Part shown: positions 705 through 64,000 of the stretch, piece by piece | How positions within the stretch are numbered: the stretch's first letter is position 1 | How the letters are laid out: each line of letters opens with the position of its first letter | IMG/VR virus record: IMGVR_UViG_3300042514_000542 | Location: 142,591-206,590 of that record | Direction: 5' to 3' (one strand) | Length of the DNA stretch: 64,000 nt | Notes under the pieces: model-generated | Databases searched by the model: none | What the model saw: the letters and a program-made list of their open reading frames with translations, nothing else | What the model was told of the DNA's origin: nothing | Position numbers and translations under genes: made by a program

Positions 705-1195
705 ATACATATACGATAAATTTATCCTCGAATTCATCCAATTATAGTCAAAAACTATCAACCACACATTTTGATGATATTTCGAAACTTGAAATAATCC
801 CCCATAATCTTTTTAGTGGGTCAATTCCACTATATATAGTGATTGATTGGGGTGACGGTGTATCTGAGACTATAAATAATTCTATAGAATCTGATAGATT
901 GGCTGCAACAGTGTCCACCACTCATGATATGTTTTATAAAACATATAGCCATGAATATTATCCATCGACTAATTCACTATACAAACAATTAAGCGCACAA
1001 ATACTGGTCTTCTATATGAATGGTGAGTTTTCTTTTTTTGTAATACCTATTCAAATCAGAACATACGATTATTTCGAATCGATGTATGACATACATCTGA
1101 AACACACGAATATTCTACCCCTTGAATACAATCCAAAGGAACATTATTTCTCAACTGAGAGAGATGGTTACTTAATAGAACTACGAGGTAATTAA
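701..1195 (+). CDS. Putative virion protein with a PKD/Ig-like fold
   Basis: IDWGDG...YSHEY pattern typical of PKD-like domains; ATGA overlap with the upstream gene. Confidence 0.5.
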   Translation: MNTYTINLSSNSSNYSQKLSTTHFDDISKLEIIPHNLFSGSIPLYIVIDWGDGVSETINNSIESDRLAATVSTTHDMFYKTYSHEYYPSTNSLYKQLSAQILVFYMNGEFSFFVIPIQIRTYDYFESMYDIHLKHTNILPLEYNPKEHYFSTERDGYLIELRGN

Positions 1196-1203
1196 ATAAT
1201 ATT

Positions 1204-3573
1204 GTGGTATCTGTAGTCAACATATCTGCGATGAATTCCAATAGTTTAAGTTCTAACTTAAACGGATTTACATTTAAGCAATTTAAAAGAAACTATCCGG
1301 GAAATTATACTATAAATTTTGCCCATAGTTTATCGTCGTTTAATGATTTCCAAATTAAAAACTATACTAATTTCTACCTAACCAACGATTATAAAATTAG
1401 TGATATATTTGATTTCGATACAACTCCCCTAAAAGCATCTTCTATTCACACGCCCATATTATGGGGAAGTGGGTATTTATCATTTTCAGGTATAGACTCG
1501 GAAGCATATGCCTTAGCCAACAGATACCATGAGAGTAAGAATTACGGTGTTGCCATTATCGGTGAAACCGAATCTTCGCTCTCCATAGATATACTTGATA
1601 ATAATATATGTAATATTTATCACACCAAAAATTATCAAAAGTTTTTTCTTGTAGTTGATGATACAAATTCTTTGGTTTTTGTGAAACAGAATTTGTTATC
1701 AACTGACCCAATGGTGGTTAAACCTCAAGATTTTCATTATCTATTTTCTGAAAATGGTAATTTATTCTATCTGTTTAAAAAAACCTCAACTGGGACAAAT
1801 ATTGTGACCGTTGTTGATGGAGAACCGTTAGTCACTCCTGTTCTCAACAATAATACATCCTATATTAATTGGTTTTTTAAAATCGAAAAAAGTATCTACT
1901 CATACCCCACCAAAAATCTAAACACATCATTCATAACCTATGATACGAATAATATGTTGGATAAGGATAAGAGTGATTTCGAATTATCAAATAACCTACT
2001 ATTACATAAAAAAATATCTAGCGATGTTACAGACGTTATCATTCTAAAAAATCAATTATTACAGAATAATATATATTCATCTTCAAACAATCTATTATCT
2101 GGATTTAATAAGAATATATTTGTAAATGAGTTGAGAGAATATACCTCTATTGGAAATTCTATAGATTCAGAGACATCTGAGGCATTAGATTTGAATTATG
2201 TATTTTACAATAAACCTTATAAAATTGTAACTGGTAGTAATATATTTTATAGTTCGTCAAGCATAGAACCATTCACACAGTTGAATATAAATGATACAAA
2301 ATTTATAGAGGCTGGTGCATTTCCATACCTAACACCGGAATTTTCAGATAGAGTCTATCATCTATCAAATGATACCAATAACTATGATAATGGTCAACAT
2401 TTACTATGTACTTGGCTTTCTGGTTCACCCTTCCTCAATAATAGTGTATGGGTTGATAGGTATTATTATCCGAATCTAATCGAGAAATCCGAAGCATTAG
2501 CTGGATCGTCCACTCTATCTATAACGTATGATGATTATATTGAGGTTCTGGTGAATAGTAATTCACAGAAAAAGGAAAATATAAAAATACAGAAATTTTT
2601 TGACAAGAAAAGCGATCTAGTCTTTACCCCAAATCAAAAATACAACTATGAGAGAATCTCACAAATAGGTGTCGAATCGTTGTCGTCAAATTATTCATAT
2701 TGTCAGACAACTTTGAGTGCATACCCAACAAACTATTTCAAAGATATAAACACCAGTGGTGAAGTGAGTGTTGCATTTACGTTCTTTGGCGATGATTCAA
2801 GTTGGACAATTCAAAGTGATAGAGGATATATAGACTCTGGAATATCTATAATCAAAACTAATAACAAGATTACAATAACTTGTAAATTCTATGATGCCAC
2901 AACAAGAGATTTTAGCGGAGAATGGTTTTCCTTTAGTAAGACCCTAGATATCAAGAGCTTAAAGACTAATAATTTATGCGTATCGGTAGATGTTAAGTTG
3001 GGTATTGGATATTTCTTCTTTAATAATGAAATTGTCTACAATTTTACGCTACCCCAATATCAATTACTAGGTAAAGATATCATTCATGGAGACTTTAAAT
3101 ATATTAAAGAACAAACTTATGATTTATTATATGATGAAATAAATGGAATTTCAAATGTTTTTATAAATGATCTATACATAACCCCCGAACGAGCATTTTT
3201 AATTTTTACTCTTAATAGTAACGGGATTGACGATATTTATATAACACTACCATGTGGAATGAGGAACAGTGTTGATGATATAGCATACCTGAACAGTGTA
3301 TGTGGAACATCAACATTTAAATCAAACTATATTGATATTGAACTAAAAAATATTGGTATAACCGATGACTCAATCATAAATGATTTAAAATTAATTATCT
3401 CAGATATTGGTGAGAAGAATCTACCAGCATCAACGACCATCAATGATATAAAATTCAATGATTATAGGAAAATGAAACCCAATGCTGATACTATTACGGT
3501 TCCACCATATGCACTAGTGTATAATGGAAACCTTATTACATATAATGGTATTGTCATTATATCAACACCTTAA
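1204..3573 (+). CDS. Large virion structural protein, possible C-terminal ConA/LamG-like region
   Basis: 789 aa, beta-rich; TAAATA 5 nt before the GTG start. Confidence 0.55.
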   Translation: MVSVVNISAMNSNSLSSNLNGFTFKQFKRNYPGNYTINFAHSLSSFNDFQIKNYTNFYLTNDYKISDIFDFDTTPLKASSIHTPILWGSGYLSFSGIDSEAYALANRYHESKNYGVAIIGETESSLSIDILDNNICNIYHTKNYQKFFLVVDDTNSLVFVKQNLLSTDPMVVKPQDFHYLFSENGNLFYLFKKTSTGTNIVTVVDGEPLVTPVLNNNTSYINWFFKIEKSIYSYPTKNLNTSFITYDTNNMLDKDKSDFELSNNLLLHKKISSDVTDVIILKNQLLQNNIYSSSNNLLSGFNKNIFVNELREYTSIGNSIDSETSEALDLNYVFYNKPYKIVTGSNIFYSSSSIEPFTQLNINDTKFIEAGAFPYLTPEFSDRVYHLSNDTNNYDNGQHLLCTWLSGSPFLNNSVWVDRYYYPNLIEKSEALAGSSTLSITYDDYIEVLVNSNSQKKENIKIQKFFDKKSDLVFTPNQKYNYERISQIGVESLSSNYSYCQTTLSAYPTNYFKDINTSGEVSVAFTFFGDDSSWTIQSDRGYIDSGISIIKTNNKITITCKFYDATTRDFSGEWFSFSKTLDIKSLKTNNLCVSVDVKLGIGYFFFNNEIVYNFTLPQYQLLGKDIIHGDFKYIKEQTYDLLYDEINGISNVFINDLYITPERAFLIFTLNSNGIDDIYITLPCGMRNSVDDIAYLNSVCGTSTFKSNYIDIELKNIGITDDSIINDLKLIISDIGEKNLPASTTINDIKFNDYRKMKPNADTITVPPYALVYNGNLITYNGIVIISTP

Positions 3574-3642
3574 ATAAATAATATCATATCGAATATATCT
3601 AGGTCAGGTAAGCACCGCCAACTAATAATGAAAAGAATTTAA

Positions 3643-5409: not shown

Positions 5410-5431
5410 ACAATCACGTTAAATAAACATA

Positions 5432-8862: not shown

Positions 8863-8961
8863 CACTTTCGGGATTTGTTCAAGGTATAACTAGTCAATCA
8901 TTTTATAATAATTTAATTCACTCTGATGCTTTCGTCACTAGACAAGCATTAAATAACAGAA

Positions 8962-9309
8962 ATGTCTTCTTCTTCTTCTTCGTCTTCCAGTTCTTCCACA
9001 CCTCCAGTAACATTACCACCACCGGTAACACCACCACCGGTAAATTTTGAGTGTACTCCGTGTTATCCACCTATTCCATCCACACCAGAATTCCCACCGA
9101 ATTTTACACTACCGACAACCAAAACAGCACAGCCAGAATTTATTATAACAACACCACCCCCACCAGTTAACCCTCTAACTATAAGTATAAACATAACTAC
9201 TACTTCAACTACAACAACTCAAATAGTGACACCACCAGTGACACTACCACCACTGATAACCCCATCAGTGAAAGAATGTAATGATGGTTGCAATGCTCTA
9301 AATTTTTAG
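8962..9309 (+). CDS. Mucin-like Ser/Thr/Pro-rich late protein
   Basis: Poly-Ser start, repeated (T)PPVT(L)PP, Thr runs, two Cys pairs; TAAATA 6 nt upstream. Confidence 0.6.
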   Translation: MSSSSSSSSSSSTPPVTLPPPVTPPPVNFECTPCYPPIPSTPEFPPNFTLPTTKTAQPEFIITTPPPPVNPLTISINITTTSTTTTQIVTPPVTLPPLITPSVKECNDGCNALNF

Positions 9310-9319
9310 TAATTACTCC

Positions 9320-10150
9320 ATGAGGAATCTAACAATTGGAATGGCAACGCATGATGATTTCGATGGGTTGTATTTCACAATTCAAAATATACGTTTGAAT
9401 CATAAAGAAATCTTAGATAAGATAGAATTTGTTATTATTGATAATAATCCAAATAGTAAACATGGTAAGAGTATTCGAAACTTTATGCAATGGATAAAGG
9501 AACCCGTCCAATATCTTCCCTTCACTAAGTTTCAATCCACTACAGTTAAAAACAAAGTATTCGAACTGGCAGATACGCCATATGTTCTATGTATAGATTC
9601 CCATGTTCTATTAGAACAAGGTTCTTTGAAAAAACTCATAAATTTCTACGAAAGTGGTAAAGATTATGGTAATTTACTACAAGGTCCATTAGTATATGAT
9701 GATATGGAAAATATTAGCAGTCACTTCGATCTAACTAAATGGGGTGGCAATATGTGGGGTCAATGGGGGTCAGATGATAGGGCTAAAAATCCAAATAATG
9801 AACCCTTTGAAATCCCAGCACAAGGTATGGGTCTTTTTTCCTGCCGTAAAGATGCTTGGTTAGGTTTTAATAAGGAATTTAGAGGATTTGGTGGTGAAGA
9901 AGGTTATATTCACGAAAAATATCGTAAAAATGGTAAAAAAGTTATATGTTTACCCTTTTTACGATGGGTTCATAGGTTTGATCGACCAAATGGAACCACG
10001 TATCCAAACATTTTGGAGGATAGGTTTCGAAATTATTACATAGGGTTTAAAGAACTTGGTCTTGATACCACAGAACTCTTTGAAAACTTTCCAGAGTTTT
10101 CTAATACCGAAAATCTCAATAAATTAGACTTAGAAATATCCAAATTTTAG
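9320..10150 (+). CDS. GT2-like glycosyltransferase
   Basis: LTIGMAT, VIIDNN, CIDSH (DxD-like), GFNKEFRGFGGEE. Confidence 0.85.
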   Translation: MRNLTIGMATHDDFDGLYFTIQNIRLNHKEILDKIEFVIIDNNPNSKHGKSIRNFMQWIKEPVQYLPFTKFQSTTVKNKVFELADTPYVLCIDSHVLLEQGSLKKLINFYESGKDYGNLLQGPLVYDDMENISSHFDLTKWGGNMWGQWGSDDRAKNPNNEPFEIPAQGMGLFSCRKDAWLGFNKEFRGFGGEEGYIHEKYRKNGKKVICLPFLRWVHRFDRPNGTTYPNILEDRFRNYYIGFKELGLDTTELFENFPEFSNTENLNKLDLEISKF

Positions 10151-10377: not shown

Positions 10378-10403
10378 AAGTCCCTATTGTAGTTCGGTTT
10401 TAA

Positions 10404-10877
10404 TTAATTATTTTTACCAACTAATTCATCAAAGGTCTGCTCAATATTCAATGGTTCCGAAACCAAAACAGTGTTATAGTTGATGTCAACCTTATAATAC
10501 TGTTTACATTTTTCACACTGGACTACGTTATCGGTATTTGGTGAAAATAAGCCTTGGAACGTATTACCACCACATACACAAGGAAGTTCTACTAGCAAAG
10601 AATCGAAAATGTCCTCATAATCGAGGATAACTTTCCTCTGTTCTTCGTCTTTCAGAGAGTGTTCAGCGATAATTAGATCTTGCGTCTTAATAATCTCTTG
10701 AGATTCTAAATCTGGGCTGTTTTTCTTAAGTAAGAAAGCGCAAACACCCCAAGATATAGGCAAAACAATTGATAATGATCTAACGTAATCATCCAGACCA
10801 ATTCCATAAGAGATTAATACCGAAATTGCCGTAGCGATGACAAAATATTGCCAGTTTTGTTTAAGATACTCTGTCAT
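10404..10877 (-). CDS. Membrane protein with a C-terminal Zn-ribbon
   Basis: Two hydrophobic segments near the N-terminus, then CVC...CEKC; start placed at MTEYLK. Confidence 0.6.
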   Translation of the reverse strand: MTEYLKQNWQYFVIATAISVLISYGIGLDDYVRSLSIVLPISWGVCAFLLKKNSPDLESQEIIKTQDLIIAEHSLKDEEQRKVILDYEDIFDSLLVELPCVCGGNTFQGLFSPNTDNVVQCEKCKQYYKVDINYNTVLVSEPLNIEQTFDELVGKNN

Positions 10878-11288: not shown

Positions 11289-11318
11289 ATATATTTAGTT
11301 GCCAATGACTAAATATAT
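11289..11318. promoter_or_regulatory. Back-to-back divergent late promoters
   Basis: 11-bp inverted repeat atatatttagt / actaaatatat, each arm carrying TAAATA just before a start codon. Confidence 0.65.
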
Positions 11319-13760: not shown

Positions 13761-13768
13761 GAAGATAT

Positions 13769-14275
13769 TTAACTATCAACTTCAACTTTACTAGTGTATT
13801 GATTATCTTCGGTTTTTTGAGGGACACCCTTCTCGATTAGAGTAGTGATAATGATTTCCATTGATTGTGTTTTAAGGGAATAGTTCTTAAACCTGTTACC
13901 ACCATCATTAAATTCAAAGTGAACTTCACCCGGAGATTCTTTATTTACATAACATGTAATAATTAAACAATGACCACCTGGATCTACCATGATAGTCCAT
14001 TTACGTGGATCTGAAATTGGATAATCTTTAAATAAACGAATCGCAATGAATCCACTGTCCCTCAATCTATTTAAAAAATAGCCACCTGTTGTAATCGAAT
14101 TTTTTTTCTTGTTCATTGGTTTAAATTTGTATTGGAAGTAGTCTTTAGTTATTCCCATCTTTTCATAATCTATTGTAAGTGATCTACCGGTGTAATCTGG
14201 TGCAGGTATGTCCACAGATATAAGTTCTGGAAACTCAAATGGTTGTTCTTGGTTTATATTGAATCCACTTAACAT
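13769..14275 (-). CDS. Hypothetical protein
   Basis: 168-aa ORF directly after gp45; start uncertain (alternative internal MNKKKN). Confidence 0.6.
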   Translation of the reverse strand: MLSGFNINQEQPFEFPELISVDIPAPDYTGRSLTIDYEKMGITKDYFQYKFKPMNKKKNSITTGGYFLNRLRDSGFIAIRLFKDYPISDPRKWTIMVDPGGHCLIITCYVNKESPGEVHFEFNDGGNRFKNYSLKTQSMEIIITTLIEKGVPQKTEDNQYTSKVEVDS

Positions 14276-14993: not shown

Positions 14994-15471
14994 TTTGTTT
15001 CAACTTTGGGACAATTGTATCTTCCTTTGTTGATTTTTCAAGCAACGAAATAACTTTTGTCAACTTTTTCGAAATATCTCTCAAAAGGTCATTAGTAATT
15101 GTTTGCTCGGATGTATTGAAAGAAAACTCCAACTGATCACCAGGATCGGGTGTTGGTAATTGCGGGTTATGTTGCGGTTGCACATATGGCGTGTATGACG
15201 CAGTTCCCATAATTGGATCTGGTTGATCCAAGGGTATTGCTGGTGGTACATACATGGGTTGTGGACGAACAACAGAGTTCAGAGCAAGATTTTGCGCTTG
15301 CTCTAAACCCTGTTTAATAGACATACTACCATTATCCTTATGTGTTCCCGGCATGGGATTATTCGAGATAAAAGATTCGACAACTCTCGACTCTTGATAT
15401 AAGGGTCCAGCAAATGCCGCCAAAGCAGCAAAATCATCGGGTGTCATTGGTGGTATGTATCCGTCGTCCAT
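14977..15471 (-). CDS. Hypothetical Pro/Gln-rich protein
   Basis: 164 aa between gp32 and gp45; contains QLEFSF. Confidence 0.6.
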   Translation of the reverse strand: MDDGYIPPMTPDDFAALAAFAGPLYQESRVVESFISNNPMPGTHKDNGSMSIKQGLEQAQNLALNSVVRPQPMYVPPAIPLDQPDPIMGTASYTPYVQPQHNPQLPTPDPGDQLEFSFNTSEQTITNDLLRDISKKLTKVISLLEKSTKEDTIVPKLKQNAKNN

Positions 15472-15496
15472 ATGATTAATTAATCATTGGTTTCGT

Positions 15497-16414
15497 TTAG
15501 TCAATATCTAATTCTTTAAGTAGATCATCTACATCAGTATCAGCACTGCTACGAAGACTATCGGTGTCAAAATCCATAGGAATCTCATCCTCTGGTTCTT
15601 CGCTAACCTTTTTATCAGCCTTTGGTTTGGTTTCCTTCTTAGGAATAGACTTACGTTCTTCCTTTTTAGGTTCAACTACACCATCAGTATCGAAATGTTC
15701 TTCAAGTAGTGCTTGAAGTTCTTCGACTGTCTTCACAGGATAGACTTGGGTAAGATCATGCACGCTCGCATAAACTTCATCGATTTCCTTATCAGTAAGG
15801 TCTAACTTAGTCTTAGAAGAGAATCTTGAAGATTTATAAGTTGTATAAATTCCTTGTTCCTCTGCTTTGATTTTGAAATCGCAACCATCTTTTGATAAAT
15901 CAAAGATAGCAGCACCGAATTCATCGGCATCCTCACCTGTCATTGCAGCATCTACAATCGTCTTAAGTTGTGGACCCATGTTAAGAATCTTAACGGTTCC
16001 ATTATTTTCTGGATTTGCAGGATCATCGATAACATAAACGTTAACGAACCATGCTTCCTTCTCCTTAATCGGATTTTCAAACTTCTCATCCTTAGCGGGT
16101 TCAGTATCTTTCCAACCCTTATAGAGTTTCCAACGGACTTCATTGATAGGATCTCTTTCCCCAAAAGACTTTAGGGAAATTGCATTAACAAATGATCCAT
16201 CTTTCTTAGAAGTCCACTGATTTAAATAGTGATGGAAGAATGTCTTGTCATCACCACTTTCAAGTCCATCAACGTCTGGAATCAACCTAAGTGTATAGGT
16301 ATGTCCTGCTGGGAACTTGATGATATTTGCGAAAGATCCACTAGGGGTTCTTTCCGTCTTTTTAAGAGCATCTTTGATCTTGTCAAACATACTCGCATTG
16401 TATTTTTTTGCCAT
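15497..16414 (-). CDS. gp32: ssDNA-binding protein (gp32-like)
   Basis: LRLIP, NVYVIDDPANPENNGTVKI, FDLSKDGCDFKIK, acidic tail DDLLKELDID. Confidence 0.92.
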   Translation of the reverse strand: MAKKYNASMFDKIKDALKKTERTPSGSFANIIKFPAGHTYTLRLIPDVDGLESGDDKTFFHHYLNQWTSKKDGSFVNAISLKSFGERDPINEVRWKLYKGWKDTEPAKDEKFENPIKEKEAWFVNVYVIDDPANPENNGTVKILNMGPQLKTIVDAAMTGEDADEFGAAIFDLSKDGCDFKIKAEEQGIYTTYKSSRFSSKTKLDLTDKEIDEVYASVHDLTQVYPVKTVEELQALLEEHFDTDGVVEPKKEERKSIPKKETKPKADKKVSEEPEDEIPMDFDTDSLRSSADTDVDDLLKELDID

Positions 16415-17180: not shown

Positions 17181-17820
17181 TTATATATTTAATCAAATTA
17201 TTAGAAATTTTTGTTTTTGCTTGTTTTGCAAATTCTTTCATCTTTTTGGATGTGTAGAACTTGTTTTTTGTTTGTTGAAACACCAAGTAAAAATCAGGGA
17301 ATATGAATTCCAATATTTCTGATTCTATCTGGGGTTTTTTGAAAGTCAATGCCTGAAGCGTGTAATAATTGATCTTGTGATCTTTTAAATGTTGCACGAA
17401 ACATGGCATTGTTCCTTCTATATTTAGTTCATAATCAGATAATTGCAAAGACTGCTCCTTACAATATTTCGCTACAAACTTAAGACTTTCTGCCAGTCTT
17501 CTAAGGCTATCGGAAGAGTCTGGATCTTGTAATTCCAGTTGCTTCATATAATCACTATAACACTTAATTGCTTTAGGTTTAGTGTAAAAATCCAGAGGAT
17601 AGTAATCATCATCTGAATAAATTTTGTGGGGGGCTAAAAAGAAATCTTCTTGAATGAGATTGGGATATGAATTGAAAAGTCTGGATAGTTTTTGAAGAAC
17701 CATCACTTGATCTTCATCAAGTTTAGAAAAATCCTTTTTGAGTTTGAATGGTTCATTCTTAGCCTTTCTTGAAGCAACCAAATGGTTGTTATAGATCTGC
17801 TTTTCAAATTCAGTTATCAT
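17137..17820 (-). CDS. Hypothetical protein, possibly a gp59-like helicase loader
   Basis: 227 aa, basic and aromatic; occupies the gene 59 position relative to seg and gene 32 (synteny inference only). Confidence 0.4.
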   Translation of the reverse strand: MITEFEKQIYNNHLVASRKAKNEPFKLKKDFSKLDEDQVMVLQKLSRLFNSYPNLIQEDFFLAPHKIYSDDDYYPLDFYTKPKAIKCYSDYMKQLELQDPDSSDSLRRLAESLKFVAKYCKEQSLQLSDYELNIEGTMPCFVQHLKDHKINYYTLQALTFKKPQIESEILEFIFPDFYLVFQQTKNKFYTSKKMKEFAKQAKTKISNNLIKYINESNNGNTKEGGNI

Positions 17821-18927: not shown

Positions 18928-19008
18928 GTATATATTTAGTAATCCGAGTCGTTTCTTCTTCAATTAAATTTGTTAATAGGTCAATAAGATCTGATGACGG
19001 GTCGTAAT

Positions 19009-22299: not shown

Positions 22300-22314
22300 C
22301 AGATAAATATAGTT

Positions 22315-30120: not shown

Positions 30121-30129
30121 TACGAATTG

Positions 30130-30157
30130 AGAATATCACCACCAAGCAGGATGTCAA
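30130..30157 (-). promoter_or_regulatory. Sigma70-type promoter of the polymerase gene
   Basis: TTGACA-N16-TATTCT with extended TG, 9 nt before ATG. Confidence 0.6.
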
Positions 30158-30399: not shown

Positions 30400-30431
30400 A
30401 ACATTATTTATTCCACTTTTTCAAATAATGT

Positions 30432-30605: not shown

Positions 30606-30616
30606 AATGATATTTA

Positions 30617-36491: not shown

Positions 36492-37940
36492 TTATTTAGA
36501 TGAAAGGTTTAGTTCAGTCTCCTTCCACGGTATCTGTTCGTCGTCATAAAATGTCTTTCTAAGATCTGCATGTTCAGTGGATGATTTCATATTATCATAC
36601 AAATCGAAAATTGTAAGTAAATCTTTACTATGATGTAATCTTAATCCACGACCGATTGACTGAACTATTCGAACGAATGATTTACCATTACCAGCGAACA
36701 TGACATAATGTAAATTCTTAACATTGATACCAGTTGAGAAAATGGATGCCATGGCAACACATACGATATTATCCTGCGATTCCATTCTCTCGATTATAGC
36801 CATTCTCTCTAATACGGGCATCGCACCACTAACAAAATAAAATTCCTTGTCGTCAAATTTTAGATGTTCTGATAAATGCTCACCATGTTCCAGTCTATTG
36901 ACTAGTATAAGAATATTCTTATTCAATTTAGATACTATTTTTCGTATGGTATTATTACGAGTCTCATCAGTATGAATAAATTCCAATTCTTTCTTATATC
37001 CTCTTGGTGGATGTTTATGGATTAGTTTTATAACTCTGATCGTAGCATGGGCTAAAAACTTAGCATCCCTAAGTTCCTTTGAATTTTTCTCGTATATAAT
37101 CGGACCGAATGTTCCTATGATTTTCCACACATCAATTTTCTCTTTCGGTAAAGTTCCAGTAAACCCGAACTTGTTGGGAGTTTTTATCTTGGATAGGATT
37201 TTTGTCATCACATTTCCAAGTTTGGTCTGGTGACACTCATCCCTCAATACCAGATCGACATCCAATAAATTTGTAAAGTTCCCGAATTGGGAACACAAAC
37301 ATTCAGTATTGACTATAATGACTTCCGTATCCGTTAAAGGTAACTTATAATTTCCCTTGGTATCAGTCTCGCCTGTCCATCCAGAGAAAGTAAACGAAAC
37401 TTCGTATTCCTTAAAGTCATTCAACAACTGATGAACCAATCCTGTGCCGGGAACAACGAGTAAACATTTCACATTCCCTTTGATTTTTTTCCAATTCTCG
37501 ATAAGAGATGCTTGAATCAAAGACTTACCACCACCTGTTGCCACCACAACAGTCCCACGACCCACTTTTAGGCAAGTTTCAACTGTTTCCACCTGATAGT
37601 CCCTCAAAGGATACTTAAGCCCGTCAAATAGCTCATAGTCCTTAAAACCGCACATCAGACATTCCTTAAAATTATCTGTATAAGTTATTTCTGATATAGA
37701 TTCGGATATAAGAAATTTTCGAATATCAACAAACAATCCAAAATCAAATAATCCACTGGCTTGAATAGCATACTTTCTATCAGGAATTTTGGATTTCTTA
37801 CCAAGACTCTTAGCTTTATGATTTACAAAAGAGGCAGATGCATCCTTTTCTGAGAAATGGTTACGAACAAACGTCAAGATTGAATCATCACAGATCAATC
37901 TTCCTTTTCTATAGGATTTGTCGTAGTCGAATGTGATCAT
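36492..37940 (-). CDS. uvsW: SF2 helicase UvsW
   Basis: LRDYQ, ATGGGKS, DECH, GFTGT, FSTGIN, QSIGRGLR. Confidence 0.93.
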   Translation of the reverse strand: MITFDYDKSYRKGRLICDDSILTFVRNHFSEKDASASFVNHKAKSLGKKSKIPDRKYAIQASGLFDFGLFVDIRKFLISESISEITYTDNFKECLMCGFKDYELFDGLKYPLRDYQVETVETCLKVGRGTVVVATGGGKSLIQASLIENWKKIKGNVKCLLVVPGTGLVHQLLNDFKEYEVSFTFSGWTGETDTKGNYKLPLTDTEVIIVNTECLCSQFGNFTNLLDVDLVLRDECHQTKLGNVMTKILSKIKTPNKFGFTGTLPKEKIDVWKIIGTFGPIIYEKNSKELRDAKFLAHATIRVIKLIHKHPPRGYKKELEFIHTDETRNNTIRKIVSKLNKNILILVNRLEHGEHLSEHLKFDDKEFYFVSGAMPVLERMAIIERMESQDNIVCVAMASIFSTGINVKNLHYVMFAGNGKSFVRIVQSIGRGLRLHHSKDLLTIFDLYDNMKSSTEHADLRKTFYDDEQIPWKETELNLSSK

Positions 37941-38329: not shown

Positions 38330-38357
38330 CTCGTATCTTGATAGTATAAATACATAT

Positions 38358-39292: not shown

Positions 39293-39783
39293 TTTTCATA
39301 AAAGAGTATAACGGTGTTGTTTTTGAAGACTTGGAATCCGTTTTTAAAAAAACCAATATAGATTTTTACAATTATATAACAGAAATGGGTATAGAAATAG
39401 ATCTTTCCAAAAAGGATCAACAAAAAATATATCTACATCATTTTATAATTTATCTATGTAATGTTTTAAAGACCCATAATGATAAAATAATATTCCATAT
39501 TAATTCATTTAATATTTGCGATATTCAGAAAAAAATAATTAAAAAGATTAAGAGAATATTTGGAATACGCATATGGGTGTCTCCCTATACTATTGATACG
39601 TTTTTGGAAAATTTGAAGAATCGTGATGTTACCATAACGGATTCTTTCGAATTATACTTAAACATCAAATCTAAACCAAAATCATTTAGACATATTAAAA
39701 AATATTTAGATAAGGAAGGCTTTACCAGTCTTTCAGATAGTTATTTCCAAGACATAGCAAACAAAATGGTTATTCTTTGTTAA
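39289..39783 (+). CDS. Hypothetical protein
   Basis: 164 aa; TTGACA-N16-TACACT 6 nt upstream. Confidence 0.6.
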   Translation: MIFIKEYNGVVFEDLESVFKKTNIDFYNYITEMGIEIDLSKKDQQKIYLHHFIIYLCNVLKTHNDKIIFHINSFNICDIQKKIIKKIKRIFGIRIWVSPYTIDTFLENLKNRDVTITDSFELYLNIKSKPKSFRHIKKYLDKEGFTSLSDSYFQDIANKMVILC

Positions 39784-39792
39784 ATAATCAAT

Positions 39793-40607: not shown

Positions 40608-40632
40608 CCTAAACATTTTAATAAATAATACT

Positions 40633-43266: not shown

Positions 43267-43294
43267 TCATTATTATTTAATATATTTTAGTGAA

Positions 43295-48992: not shown

Positions 48993-49329
48993 AGCATCGA
49001 ACTACCTAATTTTCGACCAGTCTAAAAACGAACTGGATAATGAATTACTTGAGGAATTTAATCCTTGGATGACAACCAAAACATTCTCATTTTATAATGA
49101 TGGGGAATTCATTCATTATATCAATGATTTTTTGAATGGTAATACCAACATCTTCAAAACTAAAGAAGAACAATTTAAATATTATGAGAATGTCATTCCC
49201 AGACAGAAATTTAAAAGAATAACTTATATTAAGAAATCTAAAACCGAAAAAGTCGAAGAGTATCCAATTCCAGAATTTTACTCTAGGCGCGAGATCGACT
49301 TATTTGAAAATATAAATATCATCACATGA
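48982..49329 (+). CDS. gp62: Clamp-loader small subunit (gp62-like)
   Basis: FNPWMTTKTFSF...IN..LN...EQFKYY..VIPRQKFKRITYIKK...YSRRE resembles the gp62 pattern. Confidence 0.6.
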   Translation: MSFKASNYLIFDQSKNELDNELLEEFNPWMTTKTFSFYNDGEFIHYINDFLNGNTNIFKTKEEQFKYYENVIPRQKFKRITYIKKSKTEKVEEYPIPEFYSRREIDLFENINIIT

Positions 49330-50774: not shown

Positions 50775-50871
50775 ATCGGAGATATTTACTCGTAACAATA
50801 ATTAATCAATCTAAAATCTCTTTATTAAATCTAGTATATTGACATATAAATAAACCAAATTAAATACCACT

Positions 50872-51306
50872 ATGAGCGAACAAGTTCCAGCATCAATTGA
50901 TATCCTTAAACCATTACATTCACATCTAGATCTTTCGGACCGCAGTTTACCAACAGATTTCGGGTTGGAAAATTATAAATTGGCTAAACTTATGGATGAC
51001 GTTATGTTGGTAGAGTTCTGTGACTTACAGAGTGGTGAAGACGGTGTGGAATATGTTATGCGTGGTGGTATTGCCATCCCAACCACACAAGTCCATAACA
51101 TGTGGAGAAAAGGTCGTGTTATCCTCAAGGGTCCGAACGTTCGATATACCGAAGTTGGTGAGATTGTAGTCTTTCCAGCTAACATGGGGATTCAAGTCAC
51201 AAACATTGATGTTGATGGATATGGCAAGATCTCCAAAGGTCTTTTCCTAAACGAGCAAAGAATGTTTGGTATTTGTGTTGATAAAGATGCGGAAGTGCCT
51301 TTTTAG
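50872..51306 (+). CDS. GroES-like co-chaperonin (gp31 analogue)
   Basis: DDVMLVE, GGIAIP, GRVILKGP, VGEIVVF, LNEQRMFG. Confidence 0.75.
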   Translation: MSEQVPASIDILKPLHSHLDLSDRSLPTDFGLENYKLAKLMDDVMLVEFCDLQSGEDGVEYVMRGGIAIPTTQVHNMWRKGRVILKGPNVRYTEVGEIVVFPANMGIQVTNIDVDGYGKISKGLFLNEQRMFGICVDKDAEVPF

Positions 51307-51321
51307 CATTAAATAATTAAT

Positions 51322-51925: not shown

Positions 51926-52261
51926 ATGTATCGTCTTGAAAATCAATTAAAACCATTAATGTTAGCTGATGTAGAATTTGTAATTGATGATAAAATTATC
52001 AAACGTGGGAAAATTAGGGTGTTTAATACTAAACAATTTTTCATTAAATTTCGATTAGAGAATTGTAACAATGTAAAAGATTACGAGATACCATATCCAT
52101 TTAGGGTTAAAAATGTGGATGATGGATATTTATTCGATTATTGTCTCTCAGCATTTATTCCTAATACCGAAGAGGTTTTTTGGAAAATGAAAACCATGAA
52201 CAGTGTAGACTCCTCAAAACTCCACGAAAAATATCTATTTGTGCGAAAGTTGTCTGCTTGA
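51926..52261 (+). CDS. Hypothetical protein
   Basis: Start placed at MYRLEN. Confidence 0.6.
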   Translation: MYRLENQLKPLMLADVEFVIDDKIIKRGKIRVFNTKQFFIKFRLENCNNVKDYEIPYPFRVKNVDDGYLFDYCLSAFIPNTEEVFWKMKTMNSVDSSKLHEKYLFVRKLSA

Positions 52262-52286
52262 CAAATGAGATATCCATGAGTATAAT
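52258..52286 (+). promoter_or_regulatory. Perfect sigma70 consensus promoter
   Basis: TTGACA-N17-TATAAT, 7 nt before the helicase ATG. Confidence 0.8.
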
Positions 52287-52293
52287 GGGCTAG

Positions 52294-53907
52294 ATGACAA
52301 ACCTCATACTCAATTTCCCTGATGGATACTCTCCATCTAATCCACAGGTCGAGATATTAAAATCAATAGAGAGACACATCCAAAATGGTGTGAAATATAT
52401 AGTGGTGAATGCCCCCACCGGATCTGGAAAATCATTTATTCCAAAGACCATAGCAAACAGCGTAAATGGTGCATCGGATTATTTCAAACAAGTTGTTGAC
52501 GATTATAGTATTTTTTCTGACACTGGTGAGGATTTGATAGCGGATGAAGACCCATTTGGTGTATATGCTCTAACTATCACCAAAACCCTTCAAGATCAAT
52601 ATAAGAATACTTTTAATGATACTGGTATACTTAAGGGTCAAAGTAATTATCGGTGCGCTATTGACGATAGTATGACTGTCGATATTGCACCATGCATCTA
52701 CGTTAAAGGGTTGAAAAATGATTGTTGGAAGGCTAATAAATGCCCATATTACAACTCTAGAAATGAAATGCTTAAGAGTAATTTCTCATCACTTAACTAT
52801 AGTATGTTTTTCAGTTTACCAGATCATTTAAAGAAGCGAAAGATAATCGTTTGCGATGAAGGATCTGAACTAGAGGAACAACTTGTCGGTCAATTTTCTT
52901 GCGAAATTGACATTCCATTCCTAGTCAAGACTGGAACCAATACCTCTTCATTCCCATCCCAAGAAACACCAACCAAAGTCCTAACATGGTTGAATGAGCT
53001 ACTATTATCTCTGAATTCAAATATAGATGATTATAAACAATATCTAAAGGATCATAAGGGTTCTACGGATTTCTTTAAAAAATCCAGTGAATATACAAGG
53101 TTGCTAAACCTACAAGGAAGTATTCAAATTTTAATATTAACATTCTACGACAGTGAATATATTATAGAACGCGAGGAGAAGAACATAAAATTCACACCTT
53201 TGAAAGTTGATAAACTTTCTCAATATATTTTTAATCACGCTGATCATGTGATCATCATGTCTGCCACAATTATCGACCATAAAAGTTTCTGTAAAGGTCT
53301 GGGTATTCCAAAATATGAATATATTGAGGTTGATACAGAGTTCGATCATAGTAAGGGACCAATCCATATCATGGTTAAACAGAAATTGAATTTTAATAAC
53401 CTTAAAGAAATGTTACCGACATTAGCTAAACAGGTTAGAGGTATTCTTGAAGAACATAAAGACGATAAAGGTATTATTCACACACATACACAATATATTG
53501 CAGATTATATTAGGGATTATGTGAAATCTGATCGTCTTTTATGTAGGGAGACTGGAGTAAAAAATGAGGAAATATTAGACCTACATGAGAGATCTAAAGA
53601 GCCTACAGTATTGGTTTCTCCTAGCATGACTTATGGTGTTGACCTCAAGGGTGATCTAGCTAAGTTCCAAATACTTTTAAAAGCACCTTGGCTACCGACA
53701 AAAGAAAAACGTGTTGAGAAGATGATGAAGCTTGACAAACAATGGTATTCGAATAAGATGCTATGCACACTAGTTCAAGCTTGTGGTAGGGGTCTTAGAT
53801 CGTCCGATGACGAGTGTATCACTTACATTTTAGATGGATCGATATTTGATGTCGTGGTGAGGAACAAAAGTAAATTACCCAAATATTTTATAGACCGCTT
53901 TGAATAA
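52294..53907 (+). CDS. DinG/XPD-family helicase
   Basis: APTGSGKS, LKGQSNYRC, four-Cys cluster, VCDEGS, MSAT, GVD, QACGRGLRSSDD. Confidence 0.88.
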   Translation: MTNLILNFPDGYSPSNPQVEILKSIERHIQNGVKYIVVNAPTGSGKSFIPKTIANSVNGASDYFKQVVDDYSIFSDTGEDLIADEDPFGVYALTITKTLQDQYKNTFNDTGILKGQSNYRCAIDDSMTVDIAPCIYVKGLKNDCWKANKCPYYNSRNEMLKSNFSSLNYSMFFSLPDHLKKRKIIVCDEGSELEEQLVGQFSCEIDIPFLVKTGTNTSSFPSQETPTKVLTWLNELLLSLNSNIDDYKQYLKDHKGSTDFFKKSSEYTRLLNLQGSIQILILTFYDSEYIIEREEKNIKFTPLKVDKLSQYIFNHADHVIIMSATIIDHKSFCKGLGIPKYEYIEVDTEFDHSKGPIHIMVKQKLNFNNLKEMLPTLAKQVRGILEEHKDDKGIIHTHTQYIADYIRDYVKSDRLLCRETGVKNEEILDLHERSKEPTVLVSPSMTYGVDLKGDLAKFQILLKAPWLPTKEKRVEKMMKLDKQWYSNKMLCTLVQACGRGLRSSDDECITYILDGSIFDVVVRNKSKLPKYFIDRFE

Positions 53908-55138: not shown

Positions 55139-55157
55139 TATATAGTTAAATAGATAT

Positions 55158-56252: not shown

Positions 56253-56312
56253 ATGGGATTATAATTTTCTACAATGGTCAGAAAATTATATATAATTAAG
56301 TTAAATAATTAT

Positions 56313-58327: not shown

Positions 58328-58491
58328 GTTCTTTATCTTTTTTGGCCAAATCATAAGATCCTTTGAGAGTTTTCGACGTAAATGTCGATGGATAGATATT
58401 ATCAACACAATTTATGTATTACCACTAATCAATAATGGGTGAATATATGTAGTATATGGTTGTTATTTGACAATTCATACTAAATACTTAA

Positions 58492-60608: not shown

Positions 60609-60636
60609 AATATTATTTAATAACTAAATAACTAAT

Positions 60637-61793: not shown

Positions 61794-62309
61794 ATGATAT
61801 ACCCAAAACAAATTCCCAAATTTGTAAAAGATGTTCAATATCAGGAATTACATCCGAAAGTTGGAAAATATTTATATAGATATAAGACATTAGATGATAT
61901 CGAGTTGGTATTTCATAATTCATTAATACCACAAAATCAAACTATAACATTTAGTGATGAACAAGGTCGAATCTGGTTGACCATCACACACAAATCTATA
62001 ATAATATCCAAGAATTATGCTTGGAATGGATGTTCACCAAAAAGATGGTGGCTGGTTTGGTGGGGAACTCCCGATTTTGAGGAAACCCTTATTGCGTCAT
62101 TATTTCATGACGCATTAGTTCAGTTTGTATACACTGAACATTTTCCCTTGTCGAGATATATATGCGACAACATATTCAAAAATATATTATATATGAAAAA
62201 ATTTAAATTTGTAGATATATATTATATTGGAGTTAGAGTAGGTAGTGAAGTATTACCAATCAATAAATATGTTGGGAAATCCAACTTGACAACACTATCT
62301 CAAGACTAA
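61794..62309 (+). CDS. DUF1353-like protein
   Basis: YAWNGCS, ASLFHDAL, YYIGVR. Confidence 0.6.
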   Translation: MIYPKQIPKFVKDVQYQELHPKVGKYLYRYKTLDDIELVFHNSLIPQNQTITFSDEQGRIWLTITHKSIIISKNYAWNGCSPKRWWLVWWGTPDFEETLIASLFHDALVQFVYTEHFPLSRYICDNIFKNILYMKKFKFVDIYYIGVRVGSEVLPINKYVGKSNLTTLSQD

Positions 62310-62319
62310 ATATATTTCA

Positions 62320-64000
62320 ATGAAGTTGTTTAGCGAAAAGGTGAAGCACACCTTAACTAACTCTTCTCAAAACATCTTACAGGTTGAAGCTTTCCAAGAA
62401 ATCTTTTTCGGTGTTTATGAGATAGAGATAAACAAGTCCAAATATCCTGTTGAAAAGATTTCTGAATATGATGGAAATCCAGTGGTGTCTGTGCCTGTTA
62501 CGGTTGAGGGTGTTAAGAGAGAATACCCATTTGTATTGTTGGAGGGTAAATTTGAGTTATTATTCAATGAGGATAATAAGCTAAACGATGAGTATGAGAT
62601 AGTTCAGGACACTATTAAAGATATTCTACTTGCGGAAACTGTCGAGGAAATTGAAGAAGTTATCAGTATTCCAGAGGTTGTCGATAATAGAGGGAAAATT
62701 CTAAAACAAATTCAAAAGGCTAAAAAAGATGCCTACAATGCTTTACAGTTAGAGAAAACCAAGAATCTAAAAGAAATTCAAGTTGAAGCTGCTAAAAAGA
62801 ATAAACTTTTAAAAGAAACCTTGGATGTTGCTAGGGAGAATCTTGTAGAGGAATTTGTATCTGTATCCAAGAAGATACGAGAAGAATTGGTTGATGGAAA
62901 TGATAAACGTTTTGATGAAATTAAAGAGACTATTGATAATAAGATCAATGATCTAGCTTCTAATCTTTCAGAATCTTTGAAGAAAGACTTTAAACAATCT
63001 TCTAAAATCTTTGATGATAGTATTAAGAAATTAGTCAAGGAATCATATAATTCTTTACAACCCAAAATAGATAAAGAACTTAAGGCTATTGCGACGGATA
63101 TTGTCGAGAAAGTAAGTTCTATTGAGAAAGAACTTGATAGAAAACTTGAGGATAAGGCTGATATAACCCTTATTGAAAATGTCGAGGGAGAACTGAACGC
63201 AGTATCCAAAGCTAATATTGAGCTTAATGATAAGATCAACAAAGGTGTCAATAAGGCACTTTCAAGAGTTGGTAATGCCGATAAGAAAATTGATGAACTA
63301 ACCATAGCCTTATCCGAAGAAGTTGAAAGTAAGATTTCAAAGGCTGAAGAGAACATTACGAATTACTATACAGAGAAACTTAAAATGTTGGAAGAAAAAA
63401 CTTTCGACATTACAGAAGAAACTAGAAAATATATAATCGAGTTGGTCACAGAATCGCGTAATAATCTTGTCGAAGAGATACGCAAAATTAAAGATGAAAA
63501 ACCAATCGAATATATTGTCGAATCTAAAGGCAAGAAACAATCAATAAACTCCGATGATTTAGTAAAGGATTTTGATAAAAAGATTAATTCAAAGATTGAT
63601 AACGAGGTTACAAGACTTCGTAAATATATTGCGGTATATTCGGGTGGTGGTTCCGTAGCAATGCAATTTGCAGATGGGGGAACCATGAATGGTGATTTGA
63701 ATGTTAATGGTAACTTAACAGTGGTTGGGTCTATCAGTGCATCCCAATATCTTGGAATTCCTTATCCATCAGAGAATGATACATTAGATGTCGTAACATC
63801 TAGAGGCAATATCACCAATAATTCAATAAAGGTTAATAATCTTTCCGCCAACTCTGCTCATCTCACATCAGTAATAGAGGCATCTGCGTTTGTTACCACA
63901 GGTGGCACATCTTCGGATTTTGTGAAAGGAGATGGATCTCTGGATAGTAATACTTATATAACAGAAGAAGCCTTTTTATCAAATCTTGTTTTATATCCCA
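62320..64000 (+). CDS. Long coiled-coil fibre-like virion protein, 3'-truncated (not in the ORF track)
   Basis: Open frame from MKLFSEKV to the window end; K/E-rich coiled coil, then SGGGSVAMQFADGGTMNGDLNVNGNL; TAAATA 7 nt upstream. Confidence 0.75.
   Translation, partial: MKLFSEKVKHTLTNSSQNILQVEAFQEIFFGVYEIEINKSKYPVEKISEYDGNPVVSVPVTVEGVKREYPFVLLEGKFELLFNEDNKLNDEYEIVQDTIKDILLAETVEEIEEVISIPEVVDNRGKILKQIQKAKKDAYNALQLEKTKNLKEIQVEAAKKNKLLKETLDVARENLVEEFVSVSKKIREELVDGNDKRFDEIKETIDNKINDLASNLSESLKKDFKQSSKIFDDSIKKLVKESYNSLQPKIDKELKAIATDIVEKVSSIEKELDRKLEDKADITLIENVEGELNAVSKANIELNDKINKGVNKALSRVGNADKKIDELTIALSEEVESKISKAEENITNYYTEKLKMLEEKTFDITEETRKYIIELVTESRNNLVEEIRKIKDEKPIEYIVESKGKKQSINSDDLVKDFDKKINSKIDNEVTRLRKYIAVYSGGGSVAMQFADGGTMNGDLNVNGNLTVVGSISASQYLGIPYPSENDTLDVVTSRGNITNNSIKVNNLSANSAHLTSVIEASAFVTTGGTSSDFVKGDGSLDSNTYITEEAFLSNLVLYP

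What the first reader, a model, noticed from the sequence alone, without database searches (positions are those of the whole stretch)
1193..62322. Pervasive leaderless late transcription: TAAATA 5-8 nt before start codons
Seen on the + strand before starts at 1204, 5432, 8962, 11324, 22315, 38358, 39793, 40633, 50872, 51322, 55158, 56313, 58492, 60637 and 62320. Seen on the - strand before 11286, 13760, 17180, 18927, 30399, 30605, 36487, 43266, 50774 and 60608. TAATTA variants lie 4-5 nt before 9320, 15471 and 31825. None has room for a Shine-Dalgarno sequence. Known: the T4 gp55 promoter is TATAAATA acting as a -10 element, so initiation would fall at or next to the start codon. Inference: a shortened gp55 consensus and leaderless mRNAs. 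The motif also corrects many start calls in the ORF track.
Basis: partly seen in the sequence, partly recalled or inferred. Interest (0 to 1): 0.6.

Follow-up and report, generated by a model that had tools for sequence, protein, structure and literature searches.

The report
Late promoters fused to start codons
A lake-water relative of phage T4 places its late-gene promoter (TAAATA), and two other promoter types, right against the start codons of its genes. Most of its messages therefore probably begin at the AUG with no leader and no ribosome-binding site, which is unlike T4 itself.

Summary
The window is the last 64 kb of a 206.6-kb distant T4-like phage from lake metagenomes.

Genome-wide, TAAATA lies 5 nt (52 sites) or 6 nt (15 sites) before a start codon. 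Elsewhere it is depleted on both strands.

The phage encodes a gp55 late sigma homologue (window 35307-35753, minus strand). The motif equals positions -11 to -6 of the T4 late promoter, so position +1 falls on the A or G of the start codon. It precedes portal, sheath, baseplate, protease and homing-endonuclease genes. It is kept, gene by gene, in about 80 relatives.

Two more promoter classes abut start codons in the same way:
- a phage-specific class, TTAATTAAAACCGAAnTAnAAT-N6-ATG.

No Shine-Dalgarno signal is used anywhere. Genes without a promoter are packed against the upstream gene.

Verdict: gp55-type late promoters that very probably give leaderless mRNAs. This is a new variant of known kinds. 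No RNA data exist, so the 5' ends are inferred and the host is unknown.

The parts
1193..1198 (+). TAAATA, 5 nt before the GTG at 1204 (789-aa protein, no family match)
5420..5425 (+). TAAATA, 6 nt before the ATG at 5432
8950..8955 (+). TAAATA, 6 nt before the ATG at 8962
11310..11315 (+). TAAATA, 8 nt before the ATG at 11324. It stands back to back with the minus-strand copy at 11292-11297 in a 37-nt divergent spacer.
11292..11297 (-). TAAATA, 5 nt before the ATG at 11286
13766..13771 (-). TAAATA, 5 nt before the ATG at 13760
17186..17191 (-). TAAATA, 5 nt before the ATG at 17180 (GIY-YIG homing endonuclease)
18933..18938 (-). TAAATA, 5 nt before the ATG at 18927 (GIY-YIG homing endonuclease)
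22304..22309 (+). TAAATA, 5 nt before the ATG at 22315 (663 aa)
30405..30410 (-). TAAATA, 5 nt before the ATG at 30399
30611..30616 (-). TAAATA, 5 nt before the ATG at 30605
36493..36498 (-). TAAATA, 5 nt before the ATG at 36487 (GIY-YIG homing endonuclease next to gp55)
38347..38352 (+). TAAATA, 5 nt before the ATG at 38358
39781..39786 (+). TAAATA, 6 nt before the ATG at 39793
40622..40627 (+). TAAATA, 5 nt before the ATG at 40633
43274..43279 (-). TAAATA, 7 nt before the ATG at 43266 (PhoH-like protein)
49313..49318 (+). TAAATA, 7 nt before the ATG at 49326.
50783..50788 (-). TAAATA, 8 nt before the ATG at 50774. It is poorly kept in relatives (4 of 21).
50839..50874 (+). Composite promoter TTGACA-N16-TAAATA-N5-ATG at 50872
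51310..51315 (+). TAAATA, 6 nt before the GTG at 51322. It is kept in 15 of 15 orthologues.
55147..55152 (+). TAAATA, 5 nt before the GTG at 55158 (gp3-like tail sheath stabiliser). The motif is kept in 40 of 72 orthologues, 39 of them with GTG.
56302..56307 (+). TAAATA, 5 nt before the ATG at 56313 (tail-fibre-like protein)
58481..58486 (+). TAAATA, 5 nt before the ATG at 58492 (gp20-type portal). It is kept in every relative examined (79 of 79).
60614..60619 (-). TAAATA, 5 nt before the ATG at 60608. It stands back to back with 60625-60630 in a 28-nt spacer.
60625..60630 (+). TAAATA, 6 nt before the ATG at 60637 (head-tail adaptor-like protein). It is kept in 54 of 61 orthologues.
62286..62322 (+). 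TTGACA-N15-TAAATA-N7-ATG at 62320. TAAATA is kept in 38 of 38 orthologues.
35307..35753 (-). gp55 homologue, a late sigma factor of 148 aa. It is the presumed reader of TAAATA.
   Evidence: phrog_234 E 1.7e-26. T4 gp55 chain 7d7c_F E 1.3e-9. phmmer with T4 gp55 E 7e-12. It is the only Sigma70_r2-like frame in the genome. It is 62-83% identical in five full-length relatives.
15469..15504 (-). Sigma-70-like promoter TTGACT-N16-TAATTA-N5-ATG at 15471.
31823..31856 (-). Sigma-70-like promoter TTGACT-N15-TAATTA-N4-ATG at 31825 (glycosyltransferase).
9282..9322 (+). TTGCAA-N16-TAATTA-N4-ATG at 9320. The -35 box was read by eye.
30118..30157 (-). Sigma-70-like promoter TTGACA-N16-TATTCT-N9-ATG of the DNA polymerase gene
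52258..52296 (+). Consensus sigma-70 promoter TTGACA-N17-TATAAT-N7-ATG of a helicase gene. No TAAATA in 54 orthologues.
10378..10413 (-). The only class I promoter in the window: TTAATTAAAACCGAACTACAAT, then 7 nt, then the ATG at 10377 (76-aa ORF)
3571..3580 (+). TAAATA about 68 nt upstream of the ATG at 3643. This is a leadered exception: the motif works here at a distance, and there is no SD in the leader.

Best explanation
TAAATA is the core -10-type element of this phage's late promoters and is read by host RNA polymerase carrying the phage's gp55-like sigma factor. The element sits at -11 to -6 relative to the first base of the start codon. Transcription therefore begins at the A or G of the AUG or GUG, or within about 1-3 nt of it where the gap is 6-8 nt. 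The late messages are thus leaderless, and 70S ribosomes with initiator tRNA would start on the 5'-terminal start codon.

This is part of a genome-wide design. Sigma-70-like early promoters and a phage-specific class of promoters are fused to start codons in the same register, with T at -7. Genes that lack a promoter are translated by coupling to the gene just upstream.

What is shown: the motif and its geometry, the gp55 homologue, the gene association, the conservation across relatives and the absence of SD.

What is inferred: that gp55 reads TAAATA, where the 5' ends lie, and how the messages are translated.
For: 1. **Geometry.** T4's TATAAATA lies at -13 to -6. Here TAAATA plus 5 nt precedes 52 start candidates and TAAATA plus 6 nt precedes 15. 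Position -1 is a pyrimidine in 77% of these sites, against 40% before internal ATGs. Position +1 is always a purine, and -5 to -1 is AT-rich as in T4.
2. **Reader protein.** A gp55 homologue is encoded, and no other Sigma70_r2-like frame was found in the genome.
3. **Gene set.** The motif precedes portal, prohead protease, tail sheath, baseplate wedge, tape measure, sheath stabiliser and adaptor genes, and three GIY-YIG homing endonucleases.
4. **A signal at DNA level.** TAAATA is depleted overall (287 against 397 +/- 18). Inside genes it is depleted on both strands: 0.65 sense and 0.57 antisense against codon shuffles.
5. **Back-to-back copies.** Paired motifs fill divergent spacers of only 28-41 nt.
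6. **Independent classes in the same register.** Class I is TAnAAT-N6-ATG (36 sites at this exact spacing; 47 class I genes in all), with T at -7 in 100% and a pyrimidine at -1 in 97% of the 36. The same box also drives tRNA genes: TATAAT lies 5 nt before the 5' end of tRNA-Asp. Class III is TTGACW-N16-TAnnnT-N4-9-ATG, 12 in the window against 2.3 expected.
7. **Spacing rule.** Of same-strand genes with a 13-40 nt spacer, 41 of 47 carry a promoter motif. Of those with a spacer of 12 nt or less, only 28 of 139 do.
8. **Conservation.** The gap histogram over 80 related loci gives 346 sites at 5 nt and 124 at 6 nt out of 1728 copies. The motif is kept per gene: portal 79 of 79, 62320 38 of 38, 51322 15 of 15. 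A helicase gene without the motif lacks it in 54 of 54 orthologues.
9. **The motif works at a distance.** The motif also lies 67-68 nt upstream of two genes, one of them the probable major capsid gene. A ribosome-binding site could not work from that distance.
Against: - No 5'-end data exist. All 20 runs that hold this DNA are DNA metagenomes.
- The host is unknown, so efficient leaderless translation in it is assumed, not known.
- Eleven of 64 motif-bearing genes start with GTG. From my own knowledge, a 5'-terminal GUG is a poor leaderless start in E. coli, though it works in mycobacteria.
- gp33 and the sliding clamp, which T4 needs for activated late transcription, were not recognised by sequence.
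- The phage can evidently translate SD-less leadered messages. An A/U-rich element close to the AUG could therefore also help translation on read-through transcripts.
Confidence: 0.75

Rival explanations
1. TAAATA is a non-SD ribosome-binding or translation-enhancer element on leadered mRNAs whose promoters lie further upstream. This is the alternative the reader named.
For: - The phage uses no SD at all.
- It translates at least two leadered, SD-less, A-rich messages.
- The motif is A/U-rich and tightly spaced from the start codon, as a ribosome-binding site would be.
Against: - Only about 21% of genes carry the motif, and it is absent from 111 of 139 tightly spaced internal genes.
- It tracks virion genes, while early genes carry other boxes.
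- It is avoided on the antisense strand as strongly as on the sense strand.
- Back-to-back copies sit in 28-nt divergent spacers, so any upstream promoter would have to lie inside the neighbouring gene.
- It lies 67 nt upstream of the capsid-like gene.
- It equals the conserved core of gp55 promoters, and a gp55 gene is present.
Confidence: 0.08
2. The element has a dual use. TAAATA is the gp55 promoter core, but on read-through polycistronic transcripts the same A/U-rich stretch also keeps the initiation region unstructured and helps internal initiation.
For: - Sixteen of the 64 motif-bearing genes have the upstream same-strand stop codon within 10 nt, so read-through transcripts would carry the motif as a very short internal spacer.
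- The host evidently initiates without SD on A-rich leaders.
Against: There is no direct evidence for it. Internal genes without the motif appear to manage by coupling.
Confidence: 0.25
3. TAAATA marks an RNA-processing site. An endoribonuclease would cut just upstream of the start codon, and leaderless messages would arise by cleavage rather than by initiation.
For: A fixed distance to the AUG is compatible with this. From my own knowledge, phages and toxins are known that trim leaders, for example T4 RegB and MazF.
Against: - Depletion on the antisense strand and the back-to-back divergent copies point to a DNA signal.
- The motif matches a known promoter core, and its sigma factor is encoded.
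- No nuclease candidate was looked for.
Confidence: 0.03
4. The pattern is a compositional by-product: AT-rich spacers, with a TAA stop codon of the upstream gene sitting close to the next ATG.
For: The genome is 35% G+C. At most 16 of 64 sites have an upstream stop codon within 10 nt.
Against: - The window holds 18 matches against 3.9 expected.
- The peak at -11 has p about 1e-57.
- Forty-eight of 64 sites are not near an upstream stop.
- The hexamer is invariant while its flanks diverge across relatives with portal N-termini 60-98% identical.
Confidence: 0.01

Closest known systems
Phage T4 late promoters (TATAAATA at -13 to -6; gp55 sigma, gp33 co-activator, gp45 sliding clamp)
   Same: - A gp55 homologue is encoded.
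- The TAAATA core is identical and lies at -11 to -6.
- There is no general -35 box.
- The melting segment is AT-rich.
- The motif is used for virion genes and for homing endonucleases, on both strands.
- About 64 sites here compare with 50 in T4.
   Different: - In T4 the box is followed by a 15-30 nt leader with a clear SD (GGAG, AGGAG) before the ATG. Only one of 33 matches has a 5-nt gap. Here the box abuts the start codon and there is no SD.
- Positions -13 and -12 are not conserved here.
- gp33 and gp45 were not recognised.
Aeromonas phage Aeh1 late promoter CTAAATA
   Same: It is a shortened and variant gp55 consensus that begins at -12 and goes with a diverged gp55. Many sites here read CTAAATA, the portal promoter among them.
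   Different: No fusion of the box to start codons is described for Aeh1 in that paper.
Thermus phage phiYS40 middle and late transcripts
   Same: This large myovirus makes most of its middle and late mRNAs without a leader.
   Different: - Its host phylum (Deinococcus-Thermus) is itself rich in leaderless genes.
- It is not a gp55-type system.
- In the present phage the early-type promoters also abut start codons.
'-10 region adjacent to ORFs' in Deinococcus-Thermus, and leaderless genes of Actinobacteria
   Same: A -10 hexamer at a fixed short distance from the start codon acts as the promoter of a leaderless mRNA. A correctly spaced -35 box strengthens it.
   Different: Those are cellular genomes using the housekeeping sigma factor. 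Here a phage uses three promoter classes, one of them read by a phage sigma factor.
Bacteroidetes-type SD-independent initiation (Flavobacterium johnsoniae)
   Same: There are no SD sequences, and start regions are A-rich.
   Different: In F. johnsoniae 87% of transcripts have leaders longer than 10 nt and the promoter -7 box is TAnnTTTG. Neither holds here.

Membership tests
T4-type gp55-dependent late promoter | The phage encodes a gp55-family sigma factor | tested here: met
   Window 35307-35753 (minus strand): phrog_234 E 1.7e-26, PDB 7d7c_F gp55 E 1.3e-9, phmmer with T4 gp55 E 7e-12.
T4-type gp55-dependent late promoter | Conserved core TAAATA at -11 to -6 relative to the start site | tested here: inconclusive
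   The core is invariant at -11 to -6 relative to the start codon. Its position relative to the true 5' end is not measured.
T4-type gp55-dependent late promoter | Full 8-bp TATAAATA box (T or A at -13, A at -12) | tested here: not met
   Position -13 is A 50% / G 31% and position -12 is T 44% / A 29% / C 19%. The whole genome holds only 31 TATAAATA. Weak conservation at -13 and the CTAAATA variant of Aeh1 are known.
T4-type gp55-dependent late promoter | No conserved -35 element, and an AT-rich segment downstream of the box | tested here: met
   The position matrix shows nothing above about 50% around -35, and positions -5 to -1 are 70-90% A+T. A subset (portal, 50872, 62320) does carry TTGnnn 15-16 nt upstream.
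T4-type gp55-dependent late promoter | Drives virion (late) genes | tested here: met
   It precedes portal, protease, sheath, baseplate wedge, tape measure, gp3-like and adaptor genes. Timing of expression was not measured.
T4-type gp55-dependent late promoter | gp33 co-activator and gp45 sliding clamp | tested here: inconclusive
   A gp44 clamp-loader homologue was found. T4 gp33 gave no hit. gp45 gave only E 0.006. The PF02916 search rang nowhere, including in the controls.
T4-type gp55-dependent late promoter | Initiation depends on gp55 and starts 6 nt after the box | not testable with these tools
   This needs in vitro transcription or 5'-end mapping.
Leaderless mRNA | The primary 5' end lies at, or within about 3 nt of, the start codon | not testable with these tools
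   No RNA run holds the sequence.
Leaderless mRNA | A -10 element lies 5-7 nt upstream of the start codon | tested here: met
   This holds in three promoter classes.
Leaderless mRNA | No SD, and the start codon is AUG or GUG | tested here: met
   An SD-like 4-mer occurs in 0-3% of promoter-bearing genes against 12% in controls. Start codons are 116 ATG, 11 GTG and 1 TTG.
Ribosome-binding site (SD or non-SD) | Present before most genes, including internal genes of operons | tested here: not met
   Sixty-four of 301 genes carry it. It is absent from 111 of 139 genes that lie 12 nt or less from the upstream gene.
Ribosome-binding site (SD or non-SD) | Selection acts on the mRNA strand only | tested here: not met
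   The motif is depleted on both strands: 0.65 sense and 0.57 antisense.

The most novel reading that the evidence does not exclude
A whole, widespread clade of lake T4-like phages expresses nearly every transcription unit as a leaderless message and uses no SD. Leaderless initiation would then be a take-over device: the phage shifts the host's initiation machinery (the balance of initiation factors, initiator tRNA, or a ribosome modification) towards 5'-terminal AUGs, so that phage messages out-compete leadered host messages. The phage's own CAT-anticodon tRNAs with a C1-A72 mismatch would fit such a scheme.
Probability: 0.15. Interest if true: 0.85.

Novelty: new variant of a known kind. Interest (0 to 1): 0.62.

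Why it matters
- **Gene calling.** In this abundant, uncultured lake phage clade, gene starts and transcription units can be read directly from the sequence. This corrects many automatic start calls.
- **Evolution of a classic system.** T4's late transcription machinery (gp55 and TAAATA) has been coupled to a quite different way of starting translation. That raises the question of how a host that uses no SD handles hundreds of 5'-AUG messages.
- **A natural test set.** About 130 promoter-to-AUG fusions in three classes are available for testing leaderless initiation. The class I promoter box changes between sub-clades while its -10 box and spacing stay fixed. That points to an undiscovered phage promoter-specificity factor.

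Tried and rejected
- **Host identity.**
  - No WhiB, an actinophage marker.
  - The portal has no relative in 185,579 species genomes.
  - The nearest bacterial homologues of an epimerase are 39-45% identical. They are mostly Bacteroidota, with some Pelagibacter and Gammaproteobacteria.
  - An FkbM/GT2 protein points to Pseudomonadota.
  - The host is unresolved.
- **Phage-encoded translation helpers.** No ribosomal protein S21 and no IF3 were found.
- **gp33 and gp45.** Neither was found by phmmer or Pfam.
- **A second sigma factor for class I promoters.** A 114-aa gp55-like ORF exists at genome 24657-25001. Relatives show no separate orthologue, not even G001, which shares the class I box. 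It was rejected as the general explanation.
- **Stop-codon recoding.** The amber-suppressor tRNA suggested it. TAG ends 18 of 301 genes, and reading TAG as sense hardly lengthens ORFs. Recoding was rejected.
- **No cultured relative.** Megablast of 10 kb against 50,697 phage records gave no match. The best portal identity is 26-28%.
- **Literature.** No paper in the library describes leaderless late genes in a T4-like phage.

Full report
**What the window is.** The 64-kb window is bases 142,591-206,590 of a single 206,590-bp virus record. The record is 35% G+C, and CheckV rates it complete. It is found in many lake-water metagenomes.

It is a distant T4-like phage. It encodes a gp20-type portal, a family-B DNA polymerase, gp46/gp47-like nucleases, DnaB, primase, gp32-like SSB, UvsX, a UvsW-like helicase, a gp44 clamp loader, tail sheath, baseplate wedge, prohead protease and large terminase. 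Its portal is only 26-28% identical to that of any cultured phage. More than 2,500 metagenomic proteins are related to it, many at 60-90% identity. The genome carries 23 tRNA genes.

**The observation.**
- Sixteen have TAAATA exactly 5 nt before the start codon, five at 6 nt, two at 7 nt and two at 8 nt.
- The window holds 18 TAAATA-N5-RTG against 3.9 +/- 1.9 in shuffles.
- Starts were chosen blind to the motif, as the first ATG of 305 long ORFs. The motif then begins at -11 in 34 genes and at -12 in 11, against 0.29 per offset elsewhere.
- Genome-wide, 67 of 287 copies sit 5 or 6 nt before a start candidate. With conservative rules, 64 genes carry the motif.
- The aligned sites show an invariant TAAATA, weak R and W at -13 and -12, an AT-rich -5 to -1, and T at -1 in 71%.

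**Why it is a promoter.**
- T4's late box TATAAATA occupies -13 to -6. TAAATA followed by 5 nt therefore puts +1 on the first base of the start codon.
- The phage encodes a gp55 homologue at window 35307-35753 on the minus strand. It matches phrog_234 at E 1.7e-26 and the T4 gp55 chain of PDB 7d7c at E 1.3e-9. It is the only Sigma70_r2-like frame in the genome. It is 62-83% identical in five complete relatives.
- The motif precedes portal, prohead protease, tail sheath, baseplate wedge, tape-measure-like, gp3-like and adaptor genes. It also precedes three GIY-YIG homing endonucleases inserted among the replication genes.
- TAAATA is under-represented overall, at 287 against 397 +/- 18. Inside coding sequence it is depleted on both strands: 0.65 sense and 0.57 antisense against codon shuffles. 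These are the lowest values of ten A/T hexamers tested. That is what a DNA signal predicts, and not what an mRNA signal predicts.
- Divergent gene pairs have two back-to-back copies in spacers of 28, 32, 34 and 41 nt. That leaves no room for any other promoter outside the neighbouring gene.
- The motif also lies 67-68 nt upstream of two genes: the probable major capsid gene at genome 6914, and window 3643. It therefore works at a distance where a ribosome-binding site could not.

**The wider pattern.** An unbiased hexamer scan of upstream regions turned up a second, stronger signal.
- Its sequence is TTAATTAAAACCGAAnTAnAAT followed by 6 nt and ATG. It precedes 47 genes, mostly small ORFs on the minus strand of genome 48-110 kb.
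- At the 36 sites with this exact 6-nt spacing, T at -7 is present in 100% and a pyrimidine at -1 in 97%.
- The same box precedes tRNA genes. Before tRNA-Asp the sequence reads TTGAC, then the box, then TATAAT, then 5 nt to the mature 5' end. It is therefore a transcription signal.

A third class is sigma-70-like: TTGAC(A/T)-N16-TAnnnT-N4-9-ATG.
- There are 12 in the window against 2.3 +/- 1.3 expected.
- It precedes DNA polymerase, a helicase and a dTMP-kinase-like gene.

All three classes place the T of the -10 box at about -7 from the start codon.

No class shows an SD, including the 173 genes without a motif. SD-like duplexes occur in 12% of those genes against 11% before internal ATGs.

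Spacing follows a simple rule. Of same-strand genes with a 13-40 nt spacer, 41 of 47 carry a promoter motif. Of those within 12 nt of the upstream gene, or overlapping it, only 28 of 139 do. The simplest reading is that ribosomes enter either at a 5'-terminal start codon or by coupling. A few A-rich leadered messages are exceptions.

**Conservation.**
- In 80 related loci (portal 60-90% identical), TAAATA shows the same gap peak: 346 sites at 5 nt and 124 at 6 nt out of 1728 copies.
- Before the portal gene the hexamer and its 5-6 nt gap are kept in 79 of 79 relatives, while the flanks diverge.
- Conservation is specific to each gene. The counts are 38 of 38, 15 of 15, 54 of 61 and 40 of 72 for motif-bearing genes. 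They are 0 of 54 for a helicase gene that has a sigma-70-type promoter instead.
- The class I box is identical in the closest relative (41 copies) but absent from four more distant complete genomes.
- Those genomes carry different boxes in the same place: ATTAAACACTAnnnTATAAT-N6-ATG, or TTAAAAACTAGAATACAAT-N6-ATG. The -10 box and the fusion to the ATG are therefore conserved, while the upstream box co-varies with lineage. This would be expected of a phage-encoded specificity factor, which I have not identified.

**Comparison with what is known.**
- In T4 itself, TATAAATA is followed by 15-30 nt containing GGAG-type SD sequences before the ATG. Only one of 33 matches has a 5-nt gap. The promoter is therefore of the T4 kind, but the message architecture is not.
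- A shortened consensus (CTAAATA in Aeh1, weak -13 in several phages) is already known.
- Leaderless middle and late messages are known from Thermus phage phiYS40.
- A '-10 region adjacent to ORFs' is a documented expression mode in Deinococcus-Thermus.
- In Flavobacterium, which also lacks SD, most messages are leadered.
- I found no paper describing leaderless late genes in a T4-like phage.
- I therefore file this as a new variant of known kinds.

**Limits.**
- No RNA data hold this phage, so the 5' ends, the timing of expression and the gp55 dependence are inferred.
- The host is unknown, and the hints conflict.
- gp33 and the sliding clamp were not recognised.
- GTG starts at 11 of 64 sites are conserved in relatives. 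They would need a host that accepts a 5'-GUG.
- My gene list is a simple longest-ORF call and not a curated annotation. A few class assignments at internal start candidates are probably chance, for example window 4997 and 41577.

Noticed in passing
Genome 48-110 kb, minus strand (outside the window); one copy at window 10378-10413 (minus strand): A 22-nt promoter box, TTAATTAAAACCGAAnTAnAAT, lies 6 nt before the ATG of 47 mostly small ORFs. In more distant relatives the upstream half is replaced by AAACACTA or AAAAACTAGA, while TAnAAT-N6-ATG stays. This suggests a co-evolving phage specificity factor that is not identified.
   Followed up: partly
Genome 24657-25001, plus strand (L082:4657-5001), outside the window: A second, shorter gp55-like ORF of 114 aa (phrog_234 E 2.8e-12; T4 gp55 E 4e-6) sits in the tRNA region. 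In five complete relatives it matches only their main gp55 at 36-41% identity, so it looks like a strain-specific duplicate.
   Followed up: partly
Genome 21470-32161 and 55502-56048 (outside the window): There are 23 tRNA genes. One is an amber-suppressor-type tRNA (anticodon CTA, 23941-24013). Four are CAT-anticodon tRNAs, two of which have a C1-A72 mismatch like bacterial initiator tRNA. TAG ends only 6% of genes, but there is no sign of recoding.
   Followed up: partly
Genome 28673-28714 (outside the window): tRNA-Asp is preceded by TTGAC, the class I box, TATAAT and 5 nt. The transcript would start at or next to the mature tRNA 5' end, so little or no 5' processing would be needed.
   Followed up: no
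Window 16422-17180, 18079-18927 and 35750-36487 (all minus strand): Three paralogous GIY-YIG homing endonuclease genes are inserted among replication genes and next to gp55. Each has its own TAAATA-N5-ATG. Another GIY-YIG-like ORF lies at 38849-39292.
   Followed up: partly
Window 58453-58486 and the portal loci L001-L080: About 16 nt upstream of the portal's TAAATA, a TTGnnA or TTGAAT element is conserved across the clade. The portal promoter may be a composite of a -35-like box and the late core. Sites 50872 and 62320 also have TTGACA at that distance.
   Followed up: no
Window 44000-48000: This is an AT-rich island (30% G+C) of glycosyltransferase and FkbM-methyltransferase genes. It holds 18 of the window's 106 TAAATA copies, none at a gene start. 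The motif is not purged here, perhaps because the DNA was acquired recently.
   Followed up: no
Genome 6854-6913 and 8366-8467 (outside the window): The probable major capsid gene (483 aa) is one of the few leadered genes. It has TAAATA at -67 and an A-rich leader without SD. It is followed by a strong GC hairpin with a T-run that looks like a terminator.
   Followed up: no
Window 10909-11526, 18079-18963, 38265-38606, 50019-50798 and 56274-57416: The longest-ORF start calls overshoot the motif-defined starts at 11286, 18927, 38358, 50774 and 56313. At 11286 the longer call would overlap the divergent gene that starts at 11324.
   Followed up: partly
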